The translations under genes and the position numbers were made by a program. DNA of 64,000 nt, from contig OZ287699.1 of assembly GCA_965649825.1 (NCBI GenBank), forward strand, positions 1,332,477 through 1,396,476. The letters run 5' to 3'. This DNA is from Penicillus capitatus. Its lineage: Eukaryota; Plantae; Chlorophyta. Positions 1 to 32,000 of the stretch are shown here, piece by piece (the stretch's first letter is position 1; each line of letters starts with the position of its first letter). Under the pieces are notes generated by a model, which saw only the letters and a program-made list of their open reading frames with translations, was not told where the DNA came from and searched no databases.

Positions 1-669
1 GTAAATGGGCACAGATGATTCTCCCTCCCTTGTTAATGACGTCTTCAAATTGTTTATGTTTTTGATGCTCCTTCCACCAAACACGTTCCAATAGAGAAGA
101 AACGTGTTCCTCTAGTCTTCCTTGGAAGTTCCTCGAGACGGATTCTTTTATGCTTGTCAACATACTTCCAGCCATGTAATCGCCTGAACGAGCCGGGTAG
201 CTTTTCACGATGTCCTTCAAGGAATCCGGAAGGGCATAGTCTCGGAGAAAGCTGTCCAACAATGGATGTTTCAGTAGACTTTTTTTTCCGTTCTAATCCT
301 TTTCCAGAAATATGCGAAAACAATTGTTGGATGAATGTTCTTCGGAACAATAATTCGCATTCGGGGTCTTCGCTTGCTAATAGATTCAAAAAATAAACCG
401 GAGACATGCCGTAGAATACCAAGCGCCACTGAGTGGACCTCAATCGTCCGGAGAGCGTTATCAAGTTGCGTTTCGGGAATATCATCACGCACCACGGACT
501 GTAGACCAACCGTTACTGTCTTCTTTCGTATTTTGTATGCTTTCCATTTTCTGTGCTCAGCGAACTCTGCTAGTTTTCGAGTTACTGCAAATTTCGCTGT
601 TCTTCGATTTGTCGAATCGCTCTCCTCTTCGACGCCGAGGTCGGAATCGCAATCTGAATCAGTGTCCGG
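1..669 (-). mobile_element. Fanzor1-like (eukaryotic TnpB/OMEGA-type) gene, N-terminal WED/REC part; truncated by the window edge, with a frame break at 274-292
   Basis: Open minus frame 669-274 (...KAYKIRKKTVTVGLQSVVRDD...TIEVHSVALGILRHVSGLFF...), then an open frame from 280 to the edge (SLLKHPLLDSFLRDY...DYMAGSMLTSIKESVSRNFQGRLEEHV). The second segment matches in register the Fanzor1 REC motif I recall from SpuFz1 (NYLTVSMMTNLKVNVQEHFMQMLLRYI). The RuvC region lies outside the window. Confidence 0.6.
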
Positions 670-2443
670 TTAAATGGGCGAACCTACATCAGACGAACGT
701 TTTAATGCGTCCGTCGAAGGAAAGAAAAACCTGATCGTTTCATCGGAAAGACGCCGCCGCTCCAAAGCGAATACGTCAGACAACCCGTCGATCGAAGAAA
801 GCGAAAACGAATCTACTAAATGCGTCCACTCAGGCTGGACGCGGGTAATTCAAACAAGACTTACAGTGTGGCGCCGTCGTCTAGAGTGCGTCTGTCTCAG
901 CTCACGTTTTTCAGAATTCGAAGAATCTATAAGATTCGAGGTTTACGAGGCGTCGGTGACAGATTCGCTATGTCTCTTTCACGTCATTTCAAACCGTCGT
1001 GAGGCGAACAAGAGATTCGACCGACATGAACTGCTTTACATCTGGGAACACGTTCACAGTCCGCAAAGTAGACATGGCGTTCTTTTCGTCCTGTTCTAAC
1101 TCCTTCTGACGCTTGGCACATCGAATGACGTGCCTCCAGAATCTCTGAATCATATTGTACAACGTCGCGTTTTCCCAGGATTAATATCTATTTGTCGAAA
1201 GACATTCGTCTGAAGCGATTTTTACGTTGCGCGGATACGCACCGTGTTCATAACGACGCCATGTCGGCCACATTTTTCCTCAGCAAAATCGATCGCTTCG
1301 ATCTAGATCATGCCGCCCCTTAACCTGCATCAGCATACTGTCGTGCAAACCGTACACACTTCCTTTCTGATAGTGTCCAGTCATGTTCAGATCCTTTTCT
1401 TTCGAACTGTTTTTTCGCATTCTGATAAAAAAAGAAAATACTGCTAATGACATGGGCTGTTTTTCACGACGATATTAAAATCTCGCGATCTGTTTGTCGA
1501 AGTTGAAGGTTCTCTAACGTTCGCTGCCGTGTGAGATTGACAACTGACTACTTGATGACATCGTCGCTCATCCAGTCAACGCAATGCGACGATTCCATCC
1601 TTCAAAACACCATCGGTCCAATACGTTTCGTCTTTCCCGTCATGACTTGGCACCGACGCTAACAGATCTCGCAGGCGTCAGCACATCATCTCTTTCGTAT
1701 CTTGCACGGAGAGAAAGAAACGGTTCGTCGTCCACAAAGTCAACGTCAGAAGATGCCGACGCTGTGTAGAAGCCATCAACCGAAATGACTCGGATGCGTC
1801 TGCCATCGCGAGCCGCGGAAACGTAAATCAGTCCGAGAAACGGTGCAGCCAGCGGCAGTGCCGCCCCTCGTACTGTCGAGTCAACTATTAACCAACGAGC
1901 GGCTTCATGTCTTGACAGACAGTCGACCATCAATCACTTTCTACAATCGTTCCGATATGGACGGACGGACGCTCTCTGCTTTTCTCTAGCCCACAAAATA
2001 AAGATGCCGTCTGTTTGCGAACACGAGTGATGGTCCTTCTCCAGGACTATATCTCTTCTCCCAAGTCATCCTAAAAATCAACAATGTCGCTGTTTTCTTC
2101 CCCAGGCCATCAATGACCGCACAGGACCTTCAGCGTTTGCAGGGACGATTTCTAAGATTGTCGCGCGTCTACAATACCCCACATGTCCTTCCGTCACGTT
2201 GCGGGCAACTCCGATCTCGGCCTACCGCGTTGCCCGCCTACGTATTCAAAGCAGTCATTGTCCCAGAACCTTCCAGCCAAGACGCTTACGTTTGTTTTCA
2301 ACACTTATCCCTTTTCGGAAAAAGTCGCGACTGCCACGTTTCGTTGTACCGCATGCATACCGTCATCTAGCTTTTCTTTTAACGATTTTTTGTACCTGTC
2401 GTGCTGCTGAGTGTTTTAAGCCAACGAAGTGCTGAAAGGGTTT

Positions 2444-3482
2444 ATGTCTCGCCGACGCTTTATTGTCGATATCTGCGGAATGCGCTGTTTCGGACAACGT
2501 TCCAAAGTTCACACACGCTCCATAAACAGTCGCAAAAGGCTCTCTCGACGAAGGCTGCTCTCTCGTCGCGTTATGCCCACAGTCAAATGCATCGAAGACG
2601 TCGCCAAACTACTCACGGATGCCGGTCTAAGAAGATGCAGCCTCATTGTCGGAATCGATTTCACCGGAGCCAACGAAACGGGTTGCAGAACATCGTTCGC
2701 CGGTACCGTCTCGCTCTCTTCCGCACACGATACATTGAGTGCTCGATGCTGCAGGTCGAAATCTTCACGACCTTGGCGAAACTTCCAATCCTTTCCTCAT
2801 CGCTCTGAATACATTGCCACGCGTACTTGAAGGATTAGAAGATTCATGTCGCATGTTTTGTTACGGGTTTGGAGATACGACGACGAAAGAGCGTTCCGTT
2901 TTCGCTTTCTTCTCTGAGGATGCTATCGTGACCGAACACCGTAGTCTCGTGCAACGATACCGACAGATAGTGCCATTCATTGCCTTATCAGCGCCGACAT
3001 CGTGTGCACCATTAATTCGACAGGCCATGCGACGCGTGTATCAAAGTTGCATGCAGTTTCATTTGCTGCTGATTCTATTGGCAGGACCCATTTCGGCAAA
3101 CTGTCGAGCAGCCACAGCCGATGCCATTTTCCATGCCTCATATTTCCCCATCTCTATCGTAACAATCGGTATGGGCGATGGGCCATGGGATGAAATGCGT
3201 CGCTTTGAGGAGGAACTGCCTGATAGAAGATGGGAAAACTTCAGCTTTGTCGAATTTAAAGAATTTCGAAAACTCTCGAAGATGTCTGAAAAGGCCAGAG
3301 AGAAGGGCGAAGCCAAATTTGCGCTCCGGATCATGGAAGATCTTCCCTATCATTTCGAATGCATGAACGAATCTCGTGGCCCTGTCGATCAACAGAGTGT
3401 ATTCAACATCCTTTCCCGCATTCCAAATTCGATTCTGATGGGACCGCCTACAGATAACGATGAATCGAACATATGCTCTTGA
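2444..3482 (+). CDS. Copine/vWA-domain protein (RGLG-like, no RING), divergent paralog 1
   Basis: LIVGIDFTGAN, CYGFGD, PLSIV-like PISIVTIGMGDGPWDEM and WENFSFVEF motifs; 52-nt GT-AG intron 2703-2754 joins SFAG|RNLH. Confidence 0.85.
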
Positions 3483-4944: not shown

Positions 4945-5930
4945 CTACGGCAAAGGCATGTTGAAATGCACTGGAGGATCGATCAGGATGGATGGTGGAA
5001 TCTCGGCGATGATCGGACGGACCCGATTCTGGGCGTTCGGGCCCATCATCTCCTCTGCGATTCTGTACTGATCCGGCAGCTCCATCAGTACCTGCAGTGC
5101 GAAACTGGCTTCCCTTCTCTCTTCTGTCACCAGGGAGGGGTTGCTCATGATCCTGTTGTACTCGACGAACTGAAAGTTATCAAACCTTCTCTGAGGGATC
5201 GCGTCGTCAAAGGTCCTCATCTCGTCCCACGGCCCGTCACCGACGCCGACCATCACGATGGAGAGTGGAAAGAATGAGGCGTCGTAGATCGCCTGCATCG
5301 TGGCAGCCTTCCAGGCACTCGATATCTGACCGTCCGCCAGAATGAGAAGCAGATGGAATCGCATGCCTGTGTAGTAGACGCGGCGCATCGCCTGGCGGAT
5401 CAGCGGCTCGAAGGAAGTAGGACCGGACAGATCCACCAGTGGAGCAATCTGCCTGTACTTTGCGAGGAGGACATCCAGTCCCCTGGGCGCGTCGTCGTTT
5501 GGGAAGAATGAGAAAACCGAGTGCTCCCGAGTGTTGACGTCTCCAAACCCGTAGCAAGGGATCAGATTGTCGTCATCAAACGAGCTCAGCGTCCTGGCGA
5601 TGAGGCTAAGTGAGACCTGATACGGATTTTGGGGCCCGGATACCGAATGGAGACACTGCCCTACAGGGGGAAGGAGGATCGTCTCCATGGCGGTTCGACT
5701 GGCGACAGGACTAACCCCCAAAAGAGCGTTCTCCTGTCCACTCGTTGGATTTTGTAAAGTCGATACCAACAAGAAGCTGACAGGATTCGAGACCGGCTTT
5801 CCTTAGTTCTCTGGTGACCTCGTCTATCGTCTCGTACTGGTCCGGTATTCTTCTGAAGGGTCGGACATTCTGCTGCGGTCTTCGTTGCCTTCTATTTTCT
5901 GCATGCGACGCTCGGCGAGAACCGTGCATC
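4945..5930 (-). CDS. Copine/vWA-domain protein (RGLG-like, no RING), paralog 2
   Basis: LLVGIDFTKSNEWTG, LIPCYGFGD, SGPTSFEPLI, ILADGQI, GVGDGPWDEM, FDNFQFV; 55-nt GT-AG intron; start codon uncertain. Confidence 0.9.
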
Positions 5931-7335: not shown

Positions 7336-8428
7336 CTACGGTAAAGGCATGTTGAAATGCACTGGAGGATCGATCAGGATGGATGGTGGAATCTCGGCGA
7401 TGATCGGACGGACCCGATTCTGCGCGTTCGGGCCCATCATCTCCTCTGCGATTCTGTACTGATCCGGCAGCTCCATCAGTGCCTGCAGTGCGAAACTGGC
7501 TTCCCTTCTCTCTTCTGTCACCAGGGAGGGGTTGCTCATGATCCTGTTGTACTCGACGAACTGAAAGTTATCAAACCTTCTCTGAGGGATCGCGTCGTCA
7601 AACGTCCTCATCTCGTCCCACGGCCCGTCACCGACGCCGACCATCACGATGGAGAGTGGAAAGAATGAGGCGTCGTAGATGGCCTGCATCGTAGCAGTCC
7701 TCCAGGCACTCGATATCTGACCGTCCGCCAGAATGAGAAGCAGATGGAATCGCATGCCGGTGTGGTAGACGTGTCGCATTGCCTGGCGGATCAGCGGCTC
7801 GAAGGACGTAGGACCGGACAGATCCACCAGTGGAGCAATCTGCCTGTACTTTGCGAGGAGGGCATCCAGTCCCCTGGCGGCATCGTTGTTCGGAAAAAAG
7901 GAGAAAACTGAGTGCTCCCGAGTGTTGACGTCTCCAAACCCGTAGCAAGGGATCAGATTGTCGTCATCGAACGAGCTCAGCGTTCTGGCGATGAGGCCAA
8001 GGGAGACCTGATAGGGATTGGGAGGCCCGGATACCGAGTGCAGACACTGTCCTACACGCGAAGGAGAATCGTCTTCTTGACGGTTCTGAGCAGCGTCAAT
8101 GCTTACCCCCAAAGGAACGTTCTCCTGTCCACTCGTTGGATTTTGTAAAGTCGATGCCAACAAGAAGCTGACAGGATTCAAGGCCGGCTTTCCTTAGTTC
8201 TCTGGTGACCTCGTCAATCGTCTCGTACTGGTCCGGTATTCTTCTGAAGGGTCGACCGTGCTGCTGCGCACCTCGGTCAGTAGCCGCTGGTACAGCTCGC
8301 GTTTCATTCTTTATGCGGTTTCGTTTTGGCTCTTTTGTCCGACCTAACGTTAGTCCTCGTGTCTTGTTCGAAGTTCGGGCAGGTACATTAACGCTTAAGC
8401 AGACGCCCATGAAAACTGCAGGCGACAC
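7336..8428 (-). CDS. Copine/vWA-domain protein (RGLG-like, no RING), paralog 3; tandem duplicate of paralog 2
   Basis: Same motifs; collinear with paralog 2 at offset 2391; 55-nt intron at the same position; start codon uncertain. Confidence 0.9.
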
Positions 8429-26841: not shown

Positions 26842-28800
<1,959 letters not shown>

Positions 28801-29082: not shown

Positions 29083-32000
29083 GTGGGTGGTCTGGCGAAA
29101 GTGTTTTCGACAGACGATGATCAGATGTCGTCATCATTGGATGACGTGCCTCTGATGGCATGGTCGGATCGGAATTATGAGGGATGCGAGGTCAGTGCGT
29201 CGACGAGAGAAGATGAGAGTACTTTCGAAGAAAAGAGTGAGATGATATTGGAAGAAGGCGAAGGGATATGGCGACACGATGATGTTGTACAGAGCACGTG
29301 CTCTGCTGATGATATGACGGTCGAAATGGAAAGCACCGTGGACGAAGTTCCGATCGACTTGGGGGAAGAAGACGCAGTGACGATAAGCTCAGACGAAAGT
29401 GCCACAGACAGGGCAATAGATGCGCCTTCGTCACTTCAATCATCCGTGCAAGGGACAACCGTTCATCCGAGCGAACCGTCGTCTGTCAACGGCGTTGCGT
29501 CAGAGGTGGCATCTTGTGGGCATGCAGAGAATGAGAGTTTGCAGGACGGGGGAAATAAGGACACGAGCTCTGTTCCGATGCGAGACCTGGCCGAACAGAT
29601 ACTCGAAACAGAAGACGACGCTATCGAGGTTCGAGCTCGGCTACACCACAACGATGCTGGAGAAGCGGCTGCGCCTGTTACGGATGTCGAAAATGAAGCG
29701 ATCGATGCGTCTTGTGTCCAGGAGTCACTTCCTGGCATCGCGTTCGATTTAAGCATTGGCCCTGTGCAGCAGCATCAAGCAACGGAGGCGCTGTCAGTGA
29801 GTGATGCAGAAGATGCGCGTTTACAGAATGCGAACAAGGATGAGAACATTTCTGCACGGACGGTGGGCGGCAGCCCTCCAGAACAGATGACTGAAACGGA
29901 GTATGCCATCGAGATCCAGGCCTATACGGATCGAGAAGAGACCACCGATGAGTCTCCTTGCGATGGCTCACTGGCTGATGGACCGATCGAATGGAGCAAA
30001 CCGCAAGAACAGTCATGTACTACACCCGAGGCACAATTTTGCAGTCGTGCAGAGAATGGAAATCTGCGGAACAGGGAAGATGACGACAAAACCTCTGGAG
30101 AAATGATAGGCGTTGTCGAAGAGATACCACCTGAAAGGAAAGAATGCGTGACTGAGGATCAAAGCCATGCTGAGTCCGAAGATGATACAGAAACAGCTGA
30201 TCGAAAGATGAAGATCGGAGAGGATGTCACCGATGGGCCTGCAATCCCCACTTTACAGGACAGAGCACTGGTTCCACTCAGCACGACATTTGTGCTGCAG
30301 CGCGCTGTGTCAGAGACACAGTCTTCCAACCATGCAGAAGATGCGAGTTCACAGAACGAGGACAACGATGGAAACGCTTCTCCGTTGATGTTAGGTCCTG
30401 CCAAACAGATCCCTCAAGGAGAAGACGATGCAATTGAGGCCCGAACGTATTCTGCAGAAGAAGAGGAGACAAAAGCATCGGACCCCATCACAAATGTAGA
30501 AGATGTGACAGCATCCGAGACTTCTTCTTCACTCCATGTCTCGCTGGATGTGACAGCATCCGACGTCAACCATTCCTCTACACATCAGCACGTTGTTTCA
30601 GATGCGGCATCATCCAATGACGCAGAGGACGTATGTTTCCAGAAAGAGGACGATGATCAGGAAACTGCTGCTCTGGCGACTGGCCTTGCTAAACAGACAT
30701 CAGAAAACGAGGAATGCGTGACCGAGGTCCGAGACGATGCAGAAGCAGCTGATACTGATAAGGATGGAACCAATAAAGGACTGGAAGTTTATGCATCGCC
30801 GGAGGTGACAGCTTTGGATTCGACCAAGTCATCCATACAACAATGTGCTGCATCAGAGGCGCCTTTATCGGCTCAGAGAGAGCACGAACCGTTGCAGAAC
30901 CAAGACAACAACAATGACAGCTCTAAAGAAATGATGGATGTTGCAGAACAGACACTAGACGACAAGGAATGTGTGACCGAGGCCCAAGACTGTCCTCAGC
31001 AAGAAGAAGACGTAGGATCAGTGGGCTCTCTCGAGCATGCCGAAAATGATGTGACGGACGAGCCTTTGGCCAACGTCTTAATGGACAAAGACTCAATCGA
31101 TTTGAGCCATCTCTCTGCAGAGCAGAATCCTGCATTGGAGACAAACTCTGTTAACCACGCAGAAAAAGAGAGCTTGCAGGACGAGAGCAACGATGAGAGG
31201 ACTTCTCCTCCGATGACGGATCCTGCTGAGCAGATACCTGAAACGGAAGATGATGCAATCGAAGTCCAAACCTATCCTCATCAAGAAGAGCAGGCAGAAG
31301 GAGCAGGCTTTGTCGAGGATATCGAAGAGGAGGCCACAGATGCGTCTTCTGTTCATCACTCGCTTCCTGGCACAACTGTGGATCTGAGCAAACAGCAGAC
31401 ACAAAACAGTCACGCATCGGAGGCAGAATTCTTCAGCGACAGTGACGATCAACAAGAGCACCTGGTTGAAGAAGAGCTCAACATCAAACGAGATCGATGG
31501 CTTGATACACTGGCCTGCGTTGAGAGAGCAGAGAAATCAGAGTCGGAACACGAGCAAACAGAGCAGGCAGAGATCGAAACATCCGAAGAGAAAGAGCTGC
31601 ATCCCTTTACTCCGGAAGAAGACAATTCTCCACTGCCGGGAGCACTCGATCGCCACTCAAAGGAGCACGAGGGTTCTGATATGGATACCAATGCAAAAGC
31701 ACCGGACGAAGCAGACGCGAATCGGATCGACGCCGTTGTTGGGAAGGATGCAGAAGAGGACCTCCCGATAGAGAAACCAACAATACGTGCGTCGCACCTG
31801 CCCGCACAACAGGAAGAAACAGAAAAGGAGGAAGTGCCCGAGGCGGTATCAGATCACGCATCTCTTGAGAAAACCCATCAGGTATAGAGAACGCATGATG
31901 TGACTGTTCTGCCTTTTTTGTCTGTTCGATGCTGGAGTTTGCTTGTTATGGCTGCAGGCGGGAGATCAGTATACGGAGCAACTTGTGGAACTGCTCAAGG

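What the first reader, a model, noticed from the sequence alone, without database searches (positions are those of the whole stretch)
1..669. Fanzor1-like RNA-guided nuclease gene entering from the left edge
Seen: two minus-strand open frames (669-274, and 280 to the edge) that the ORF track shows only in part. The translation aligns in order with the Fanzor1 N-terminal landmarks as I recall them from SpuFz1: TVTVGLQSVVRDD, IEVHSVA, LLDSFLRDY and especially DYMAGSMLTSIKESVSRNFQGRLEEHV versus NYLTVSMMTNLKVNVQEHFMQMLLRYI. Established: Fanzor1 proteins are transposon-borne, TnpB-derived eukaryotic endonucleases guided by an omegaRNA at the element 3' end. Inference: the RuvC domain, omegaRNA and transposon end lie just left of base 1, which would make this a candidate algal Fanzor locus.
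Basis: partly seen in the sequence, partly recalled or inferred. Interest (0 to 1): 0.8.

Follow-up and report, generated by a model that had tools for sequence, protein, structure and literature searches.

The report
Broken Fanzor1 nuclease gene fragment

Summary
The quoted peptides are on the minus strand of window 1-669, and the reading continues past base 1. The family call is right. Mended for frame, the window peptide is 40% identical (E 6e-37) to intact 886-938 aa proteins from brown algae. A confident AlphaFold model of one of these (pLDDT 88) matches only solved Fanzor1 structures at the top (PpFz, SpuFz, GtFz; E 1e-10 to 4e-9). The predicted motifs lie left of the window: VGVDPG, IDEYNTSKCC, and NRN in place of DRD.

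This copy is dead. Inside the window it uses three frames, not two: 669-391, 389-279 and 280-2. The frame changes are 1-nt slips in an A6 and a T8 run. Left of the window there are three in-frame stops (TAG, TGA, TAG) and another frameshift. A 4,771-bp LTR retrotransposon with identical LTRs sits in the coding sequence 355 nt left of base 1. It is absent from the allelic contig.

dN/dS of 0.14 between copies shows the lineage was functional until recently. No omegaRNA, terminal inverted repeats or transposase could be shown for this lineage. The host is an unidentified eukaryote with a fused DHFR-TS gene; 'algal' is unverified. Verdict: a new, degenerate member of a known kind, of low to moderate interest.

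The parts
391..669 (-). Fanzor1 pseudogene, N-terminal segment in frame A (PDTDSDCDSD...GILRHVSGLF). It covers the acidic stretch, the first beta strand (TVTVGLQSV) and the start of the helical REC-like domain.
   Evidence: Aligns to P0004 residues 30-100 and to P0001.
388..393 (.). A6 homopolymer (T6 on the gene strand) carrying one extra base compared with the allelic contig L002 (A5). This is a frameshift private to the window haplotype.
   Evidence: (extra base placed at window 393). L002 reads through in one frame (GLFLNLLASEDPE).
279..389 (-). Fanzor1 pseudogene, middle segment in a third frame (LNLLASEDPECELLFRRTFIQQLFSHISGKGLERKKK).
   Evidence: Continuous with P0001, P0003 and P0004 (RTFIQQLF is invariant across the family).
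280..287 (.). T8 run (A8 on the gene strand) where the reading slips by one base. This frameshift is shared by both haplotype contigs, L001 at 41x and L002 at 19x coverage.
   Evidence: L003 and L004 read MEKRRNLLKHP / IERRRNLLKHP in one frame.
2..280 (-). Fanzor1 pseudogene, segment in frame B (SLLKHPLLDSF...DYMAGSMLTSIKESVSRNFQGRLEEHV...GGRIICAHL). This is REC-like helical domain, and it continues beyond base 1.
   Evidence: P0002 (188 aa) continues it into the contig. Aligns to P0004 141-207 and to the REC regions of PpFz1 and SpuFz1 via the family profile.
670..672 (-). TAA stop in the Fanzor reading frame. The allelic contig has CAA (Gln) here. It lies upstream of the conserved acidic stretch, so it may be in the 5' leader rather than the coding sequence.
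   Evidence: (window 672 T versus C).
670..1051 (-). Conserved 5' region of the repeated unit, shared with copies L003 and L004 (65-94% identity). No copy has an in-frame ATG here. It is either non-coding (leader, promoter or element end) or an unresolved 5' exon. The true 5' boundary is unknown because both comparison contigs end here.

Best explanation
Window 1-669, with conserved upstream sequence to at least about 1051, is the 5' third of a decayed Fanzor1 gene. Fanzor1 is the eukaryotic branch of the TnpB/Cas12 RuvC nucleases. In intact members the roughly 890-aa protein would bind a guide RNA transcribed from the 3' end of the element and cut DNA next to a short motif. The catalytic triad is an Asp in RuvC-I, a 'rearranged' Glu in the D-E-[FY]-x-T-S box, and an Asp in RuvC-III. 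That mechanism is inferred from the family and was not shown here. The window encodes only the acidic N-terminus, the first beta strand and about half of the helical REC-like domain. This copy cannot make the protein. It carries two frameshifts in the window, three nonsense codons and another frameshift further on. Its RuvC-III box reads NRN instead of DRD. In this haplotype only, a young Ty3/gypsy-type LTR retrotransposon sits inside the coding sequence 355 nt left of base 1. Related copies in other contigs lie in unrelated flanks and have diverged under purifying selection. So the lineage was active and copied itself, or was copied, until recently. This locus is one of its corpses.
For: Homology of the window peptide: P0001 at E 6e-84; P0004 at 40% identity and E 6e-37; hhalign against the family profile at 99.1% probability.

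The continuation left of the window was fetched as L001 and L002. It contains VGVDPG, LIDEYNTSKCC and FINRNVNAAVNI. The spacing is D-212 aa-TS and TS-40 aa-R[D/N]. This fits the Bao & Jurka motif D-X(125,275)-[TS][TS]-X-X-C4-X(5,50)-RD (PMC3627910).

Pfam PF07282 (Cas12f1-like TNB) scores above its gathering threshold for the L003 C-terminus (32.4 bits) and for P0006 (31.4 bits).

A 58-sequence family profile searched against PDB sequences gives PpFz1 6.2e-9, SpuFz1 1.9e-7, GtFz1 2.3e-5 and mimivirus Fanzor2 5e-5.

The AlphaFold2 model of P0004 has pLDDT 88 and pTM 0.88. In Foldseek its top 7 hits are all Fanzor1, at E 7.6e-11 to 4.4e-9 and probability 1.00, over about 880-985 alignment columns. 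Cas12 follows at 1e-4 and Fanzor2 at 2.4e-3.

Rearranged RuvC-II: Gly occupies the canonical position (FFGNG / LFGKA), and Glu follows about 32 residues later in VDEF / IDEY. This matches the description in PMC10530073.

Lesions. LTR element: 151-nt LTRs 100% identical, TG..CA ends, GCAAC target duplication, absent from the allelic contig.

dN/dS is 0.14 over 583 codons between L002 and L004. The copies L002 and L003 share 3.1 kb at 71% identity, with unrelated flanks beyond 67 nt after the stop.
Against: No omegaRNA could be demonstrated. The 3' 216 nt fold no better than shuffled sequence (z -0.53), Rfam finds nothing, and only a small hairpin shows two compensatory changes between two sequences. 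No terminal inverted repeats or target-site duplication were found for the Fanzor unit. There is no transposase near it. No start codon or nuclear localisation signal was found in this lineage. Pairwise sequence searches of the window peptide alone against PDB and Pfam find nothing, so the Fanzor1 call for the window rests on transitive homology through intact relatives. Two of the frame changes lie in homopolymers, where long-read assemblies can err.
Confidence: 0.9

Rival explanations
1. The gene is intact and functional. The frame changes are short spliceosomal introns, as in many Fanzor1 genes, and the protein is made after splicing.
For: Fanzor genes in algae often carry introns (PMC3627910; PMC10530073). 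No in-frame ATG is visible, which could mean there is an upstream exon.
Against: At each frame change the protein alignment to homologues continues without missing residues. The slips are single bases in A6 and A8 runs. The three in-frame stops (TAG, TGA, TAG) replace sense codons (GAG/CAA-type, AGA, TGG) at aligned positions in L003 and L004. The nearest intact relatives are single uninterrupted ORFs. A 4.77-kb LTR retrotransposon lies inside the coding sequence.
Confidence: 0.03
2. The lesions are long-read assembly errors (homopolymer miscalls), and the real locus is an intact Fanzor1 gene.
For: Two frame changes in the window and one further on fall in or next to homopolymer or simple runs (A6, A8, the Cys-codon run). 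The two haplotype contigs differ by single-base indels at two such sites.
Against: The A8 frameshift, the three nonsense substitutions, the post-Cys-run frameshift and the D-to-N changes are shared by two separately assembled contigs at 41x and 19x coverage. Nonsense substitutions are not a homopolymer artefact. The LTR element has a clean 5-bp target duplication.
Confidence: 0.03
3. This is a host gene family derived from Fanzor1 (domesticated and no longer mobile), not a transposon passenger. The copies are paralogues or orthologues in related strains.
For: dN/dS is 0.14. No terminal inverted repeats, target-site duplication or transposase were found in this lineage. There is only one copy in the 64-kb window. 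Very few copies were retrieved from 5.8 billion proteins.
Against: Homology between L002 and L003 stops sharply 67 nt after the stop codon, and the flanks are unrelated. L004 is a mosaic of two sublineages, which implies that copies coexisted. All four copies seen carry disabling lesions, which is unexpected for a needed host gene. The nearest intact clade sits directly downstream of an IS4-type DDE transposase.
Confidence: 0.08
4. It is a TnpB-like nuclease of another branch (Fanzor2 / IS607-type, or prokaryotic TnpB/Cas12 contamination) rather than Fanzor1.
For: The Pfam hit is to the generic TNB zinc-ribbon domain shared by all of these. The pairwise sequence hit to GtFz1 is weak (E 0.058).
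Against: Fanzor1 structures outrank Cas12 by about 6 orders of magnitude and Fanzor2 by about 7 in Foldseek, with full-length alignments. The profile search ranks three Fanzor1 proteins first, including matches in the N-terminal half. The locus lies among eukaryotic genes (copines, Sec1, DHFR-TS).
Confidence: 0.02

Closest known systems
IS4-type / Fanzor1 elements of brown algae and Ectocarpus siliculosus virus 1 (ESvi-1B, ESv-2 = ISvEsV1_1; Bao & Jurka 2013, PMC3627910)
   Same: These are the nearest intact relatives found (P0004, P0006, P0012; 36-37% identity over 93% of the mended 937-aa reading). Their clusters include proteins named from Ectocarpus, Sphacelaria, Pylaiella and Scytosiphon. 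They have the same domain order, the same RuvC boxes and the same N-terminal REC-like motifs. Homology between copies ends a similar distance after the stop (about 59 nt versus 67 nt), with a small hairpin plus a GA.TTTTCYA motif in the tail.
   Different: The brown-alga copies are intact, intronless ORFs of 886-938 aa. They sit directly downstream of a same-strand IS4-type DDE transposase (PF01609). The window lineage has no transposase nearby, no recognisable start codon or nuclear localisation signal, and is broken. I did not verify that P0014 and its relatives are the very elements named in the 2013 paper.
Structurally solved Fanzor1 nucleases: SpuFz1 (8gkh, 9ceu-9cez), PpFz1 (9cf0-9cf3), GtFz1 (9cer-9cet)
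   Same: Overall fold is shared (Foldseek E 7.6e-11 to 4.4e-9, target-normalised TM up to 0.63). So are the RuvC-II/zinc-ribbon/RuvC-III block and part of the REC region at profile level. The rearranged RuvC-II glutamate is also shared.
   Different: Sequence identity is only about 11-12%. The family here is larger (about 890 aa against about 600-730 resolved residues). No guide RNA is known for it. The window copy is catalytically and translationally dead.
Prokaryotic TnpB (ISDra2) and Fanzor2 (mimivirus ApmFz2, 9b0l)
   Same: They share the RuvC-plus-zinc-ribbon core and the logic of a guide RNA encoded at the 3' end of the element.
   Different: The matches are much weaker (Fanzor2 E 2.4e-3 in Foldseek; TnpB E about 0.5 by profile). 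Those proteins are only about 400-520 aa. They are linked to IS200/605 or IS607, which is not seen here.

Membership tests
Fanzor1 | C-terminal motif D-X(125,275)-[TS][TS]-X-X-C4 zinc finger-X(5,50)-RD (Bao & Jurka 2013) | tested here: met
   Met in the intact relative P0004: D616, 205 aa, TS, CCCGCG...C...C, 38 aa to RD. The locus's own continuation left of the window has the same spacing (212 / 40 aa) but ends in RN (NRN) instead of RD. The motif lies outside the window itself.
Fanzor1 | Rearranged RuvC-II: inert residue at the canonical Glu position, and an alternative conserved Glu downstream (PMC10530073) | tested here: met
   Gly occupies the canonical strand (RVVFFGNGQF in P0004; RIVLFGKAEF in the locus). 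Glu follows about 32 residues later in VDEFRTS / IDEYNTS. The assignment of the canonical position is by eye, not by structural superposition.
Fanzor1 | Fold matches solved Fanzor1 better than other TnpB/Cas12 branches | tested here: met
   Model of P0004 with pLDDT 88. In Foldseek the top 7 hits are all Fanzor1, at E 1e-10 to 4e-9; Cas12 is at 1e-4 and Fanzor2 at 2.4e-3. This was tested on a 36%-identical intact relative, not on the window's own broken product.
Fanzor1 | The window-encoded N-terminal region is homologous to the Fanzor1 N-terminal (REC) region | tested here: met
   Window peptide against P0004 residues 30-207: 40% identity, E 6e-37. Family profile positions 36-286 against PpFz1: i-E 0.0016. 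Against SpuFz1 the alignment covers NYLTVSMMTNLKVNVQEHF but is weak (i-E 7.7).
Fanzor1 | Guide (omega) RNA encoded at the 3' end of the ORF and element | tested here: inconclusive
   A 67-nt tail after the stop is conserved between copies, and a small hairpin shows 2 compensatory pairs. A similar hairpin and motif occur in brown-alga copies. Against this, the MFE z-score is -0.53, the consensus fold is weak (-5.3 kcal/mol), and there is no Rfam hit. RNA data are needed.
Fanzor1 | Carried by a transposon (ends, target duplication, or linked transposase) | tested here: inconclusive
   The relatives sit downstream of an IS4-type DDE transposase. In the window lineage, copies lie in unrelated flanks. 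However, no terminal inverted repeats and no transposase were found, and the 5' end is not defined.
Fanzor1 | Able to encode an active nuclease (open frame, D/E/D triad) | tested here: not met
   The window haplotype has 3 frameshifts, 3 in-frame stops (plus a TAA at 672-670), NRN in place of DRD, and an LTR retrotransposon in the coding sequence. It is a family member by descent, but a pseudogene.
Fanzor2 / IS607-type TnpB | Closest similarity to Fanzor2/TnpB and IS607 (serine recombinase) linkage | tested here: not met
   Fanzor2 ranks 20th in Foldseek (E 2.4e-3) with only 289 aligned columns. No recombinase is nearby.

The most novel reading that the evidence does not exclude
The window lineage may be a transposase-less offshoot of the brown-alga IS4-linked Fanzor1 clade, living in an unidentified marine protist. 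It would have been kept under purifying selection (dN/dS 0.14), with recombination between copies. It has a conserved, roughly 380-nt, ATG-less 5' region that could be a new functional part, such as a spliced 5' exon, a promoter or an RNA. Intact, active copies may survive elsewhere in that genome.
Probability: 0.25. Interest if true: 0.4.

Novelty: new member of a known kind. Interest (0 to 1): 0.28.

Why it matters
The result has limited importance. It shows that a tool-less reader can correctly recognise a very divergent Fanzor1 N-terminus. It also adds one more eukaryotic lineage to the known spread of Fanzor1. The practical value lies in the relatives that were uncovered. They form a clade of large (886-938 aa), intact, intronless Fanzor1 ORFs linked to an IS4-type transposase in brown algae. 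They now have a confident structural model and could be tested as RNA-guided nucleases. The window copy itself is dead. It is useful only as a dated insertion-site polymorphism: an LTR element is present in one haplotype and absent in the other.

Tried and rejected
1. Window peptide alone against PDB sequences and against Pfam: nothing. The N-terminus is too divergent for direct detection.
2. A 7-sequence profile against PDB: no hits. Hits appeared only with the 58-sequence profile.
3. The first AlphaFold run, with a shallow 21-sequence alignment: pLDDT 52.6 and a disordered RuvC half. Its Foldseek result was uninformative. It was replaced by the deeper run.
4. Search for other copies of the gene, the LTR or its pol in the window: none.
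5. Search for terminal inverted repeats across L002 4300-8000: only chance-level pairs.
6. Search for an IS4 transposase near the window lineage by tblastn: none.
7. Rfam on the whole window and on the 3' region: nothing relevant.
8. RNA folding of the 3' region: not better than shuffles.
9. Three IMG/VR scans for viral carriage: negative. One call failed for lack of conserved columns.
10. The single JGI metagenome scan returned one short, distant contig.
11. A variant genetic code as an explanation for the in-frame stops: rejected, because all three stop codons occur and the host genes read normally.
12. Host identification through cluster names and sample accessions in the literature: nothing.
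13. My early impression that the 5' region is more conserved than synonymous sites: partly an artefact of L004 being a mosaic.

Full report
**1. Observation**

One runs 669-274 and the other from about 292 to base 1. Every quoted peptide is present. The sequence occurs once in the window.

A database search with the fused peptide returned a 302-aa protein, P0001, at E 6e-84 with 61% identity and 99% coverage. It also returned the window contig's own 188-aa ORF, P0002, which runs past base 1. So the signal is real.

P0001 also shows that the coding path in the window uses three frames:
- 669-391
- 389-279 (LNLLASEDPECELLFRRTFIQQLFSHISGKGLERKKK)
- 280-2

**2. What lies left of the window**

P0002 led to the source contig. 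It is ena:ERZ25074695:ctg340523_41x_l, 1.58 Mb, fetched as L001. Window position p corresponds to L001 position 10263-p. P0002 also led to a second contig of the same sample, L002, at 19x coverage. L002 is 99.5% identical to L001 and is evidently the other haplotype. P0001 gave L003, from another sample. P0003 gave L004, a 2.9-kb contig at 5x coverage from the same sample.

Downstream of the window-encoded part, L002 encodes ...IEVVGVDPGQKE......RIVLFGKAEF...VILIDEYNTSKCCCCCCCGK... and ...CSVNFINRNVNAAVNI.... L003 has IDRDVNGAVNI at the last of these. In the window haplotype they lie 5.9, 6.5 and 6.7 kb left of base 1. The stop codon is at 6.8 kb, and the end of inter-copy homology is at 6.87 kb.

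**3. Family assignment**

The frame-mended L002 reading is 937 aa. It retrieves intact proteins of 886-938 aa (P0004, P0005, P0006, P0009-P0012) at 36-37% identity over 93% of its length. Named members of their clusters come from the brown algae Ectocarpus, Sphacelaria, Pylaiella and Scytosiphon.

These proteins carry VVGLDPGQ, VDEFRTSKCCCGCG and IDRDTNGSVNI. The spacing fits the Fanzor/TnpB motif of Bao & Jurka (PMC3627910). Pfam PF07282 scores above its threshold for P0006 and for the L003 C-terminus.

An exhaustive profile search found 522 representative clusters at E <= 1e-3. The distant ones match only the RuvC half. That fits Fanzor1's conserved C-terminus and variable N-terminus.

A 58-sequence profile searched against PDB sequences ranks PpFz1 (6.2e-9), SpuFz1 (1.9e-7) and GtFz1 (2.3e-5) first, ahead of mimivirus Fanzor2, TnpB and Cas12. 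It aligns N-terminal regions too, including SpuFz1's NYLTVSMMTNLKVNVQEHFMQMLLRYI against the window's DYMAGSMLTSIKESVSRNFQGRLEEHV region.

With that alignment, AlphaFold2 models P0004 at pLDDT 88 and pTM 0.88. Foldseek's top seven hits are all Fanzor1 structures, at E 7.6e-11 to 4.4e-9 over nearly full length. Cas12 is at 1e-4 and Fanzor2 at 2.4e-3.

The window peptide aligns to P0004 residues 30-207 at 40% identity and E 6e-37. It matches the family profile at 99.1% probability. In the model those residues are the first beta strand and the first half of the helical bundle.

The canonical RuvC-II position is Gly, and a Glu follows about 32 residues later. This is the 'rearranged' site described for Fanzors (PMC10530073).

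**4. State of this copy**

Lesions of the window haplotype, compared with its allele and with L003 and L004:
- TAA at 672-670, where the allele has CAA.
- One extra base in the A6 run at 388-393, private to this haplotype.
- A one-base slip in the T8 run at 280-287, shared with the allele.
- Three in-frame stops, TAG, TGA and TAG, at codons that are sense in L003 and L004. All are shared with the allele.
- A frameshift just after the Cys-codon run, shared.
- NRN in place of the RuvC-III DRD, shared.
- A 4,771-bp insertion at L001 10617-15387, inside the coding sequence between ...EVDEKQ and PSIKF.... It is absent from the allele.

The insertion has 151-nt LTRs that are 100% identical, TG...CA ends, a GCAAC target duplication and one intact 1,503-aa ORF. 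The domain order of that ORF is protease, RT, RNase H, integrase, which is the Ty3/gypsy order.

L002 has its own private 1-nt deletion. L003 needs about seven frame changes, and L004 needs one.

All three stop codons occur, and neighbouring host genes read normally. A variant genetic code is therefore excluded. The shared lesions appear in two separately assembled contigs at 41x and 19x coverage, so they are unlikely to be assembly errors.

**5. History and mobility**

L002 and L003 are 71% identical over 3.1 kb. They lose all similarity 67 nt after the stop, and their flanks are unrelated.

L004 is a mosaic. It is 89-96% identical to L002 at both ends, but its middle is closer to L003.

dN/dS between L002 and L004 is 0.14 over 583 codons, and it is uniform along the gene. 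The lineage therefore evolved as a working gene, spread to different loci and recombined. The lesions at this locus are late.

In the nearest intact clade, the Fanzor ORF lies about 100 nt downstream of a same-strand IS4-type DDE transposase (PF01609). Inter-copy homology there ends about 59 nt after the Fanzor stop. This is the IS4/Fanzor1 arrangement that Bao & Jurka described for Ectocarpus and its virus EsV-1.

For the window lineage I found no transposase, no terminal inverted repeats and no defined 5' end. Homology runs to at least window position 1051, where both comparison contigs stop.

**6. Guide RNA**

The 67-nt tail after the stop is conserved. It contains a small hairpin with two compensatory changes. 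A similar hairpin, followed by GA.TTTTCYA, is present in brown-alga copies.

The region does not fold better than shuffled sequence (z -0.53). The five-sequence consensus fold is weak, and Rfam has no match. An omegaRNA is expected from the family but is not shown here.

**7. Host**

The window carries ordinary eukaryotic genes with introns:
- three copines
- an ABC1 kinase
- a bifunctional DHFR-TS
- Sec1
- a diphthamide synthesis protein
- a PSP-domain protein

From general knowledge, the DHFR-TS fusion points away from animals, fungi and Amoebozoa. No plastid or photosynthesis gene was seen in the ORFs sampled. No cluster names or papers identify the samples. 'Algal' is unverified.

**8. Verdict**

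The locus is a decayed Fanzor1 copy, so it is a new but dead member of a known kind. Interest is low to moderate.

Noticed in passing
L001 10617-15387 (355 to 5125 nt left of window base 1; outside the window): A young Ty3/gypsy-type LTR retrotransposon of 4,771 bp. It has 151-nt LTRs that are 100% identical, TG..CA ends, a GCAAC target duplication and one intact 1,503-aa gag-pol ORF. It is present in the 41x haplotype contig and absent from the 19x allelic contig L002, so it is a recent, probably still active element. The window holds no other LTR or pol copy.
   Followed up: yes
window 2739-3482 (+), 4945-5772 (-), 7336-8181 (-): Three copine (PF07002) genes lie within 6 kb of each other, forming a local gene cluster. 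The L001 gene table lists two 247-aa copine ORFs there.
   Followed up: partly
window 27135-28800 (-): A bifunctional DHFR-thymidylate synthase gene, with DHFR N-terminal and TS C-terminal, split over two overlapping ORFs (an intron or a frame change). It is useful as a coarse marker of the host's position among eukaryotes.
   Followed up: partly
window 29083-31887 (+): A 934-aa open frame encoding a very acidic, internally repetitive protein (recurring ...AEQIPETEDDAIEV... / ...HAE.ESLQ... units). It has no Pfam match and lies in the stretch with the strongest AT skew of the window (+0.26).
   Followed up: no
L004 1-2941 (ena:ERZ25074695:ctg148149_5x_l): A third Fanzor copy from the same sample, at 5x coverage. 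It is a mosaic: 89-96% identical to the window allele at both ends, but its central 1.2 kb is closer to L003 from another sample. Either the copies recombined or the short contig is chimeric.
   Followed up: partly
window 674-1099 (+): A 141-aa ORF antisense to the conserved 5' region of the Fanzor unit. It is shorter in the allele (108 aa) and broken in L004, so it is probably not a gene.
   Followed up: partly
L002 7706-7772; L003 3072-3138; L005 3299-3357; L006 3852-3911: The tail after the stop codon shares a short hairpin followed by GA.TTTTC[CT]A. The sharing is between the window lineage and brown-alga Fanzor1 copies whose proteins are only 36% identical. It could be part of the guide-RNA scaffold or of the element's right end.
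   Followed up: partly
L005 1-519, L006 2-997, L008 3-1037, L009 32-658: In the brown-alga / marine-metagenome relatives, an IS4-type DDE transposase ORF (PF01609 confirmed for the L005 and L006 ORFs) lies directly upstream of the Fanzor1 ORF on the same strand. The L009 ORF is near-identical to L005's. The L008 ORF was not scanned.
   Followed up: partly
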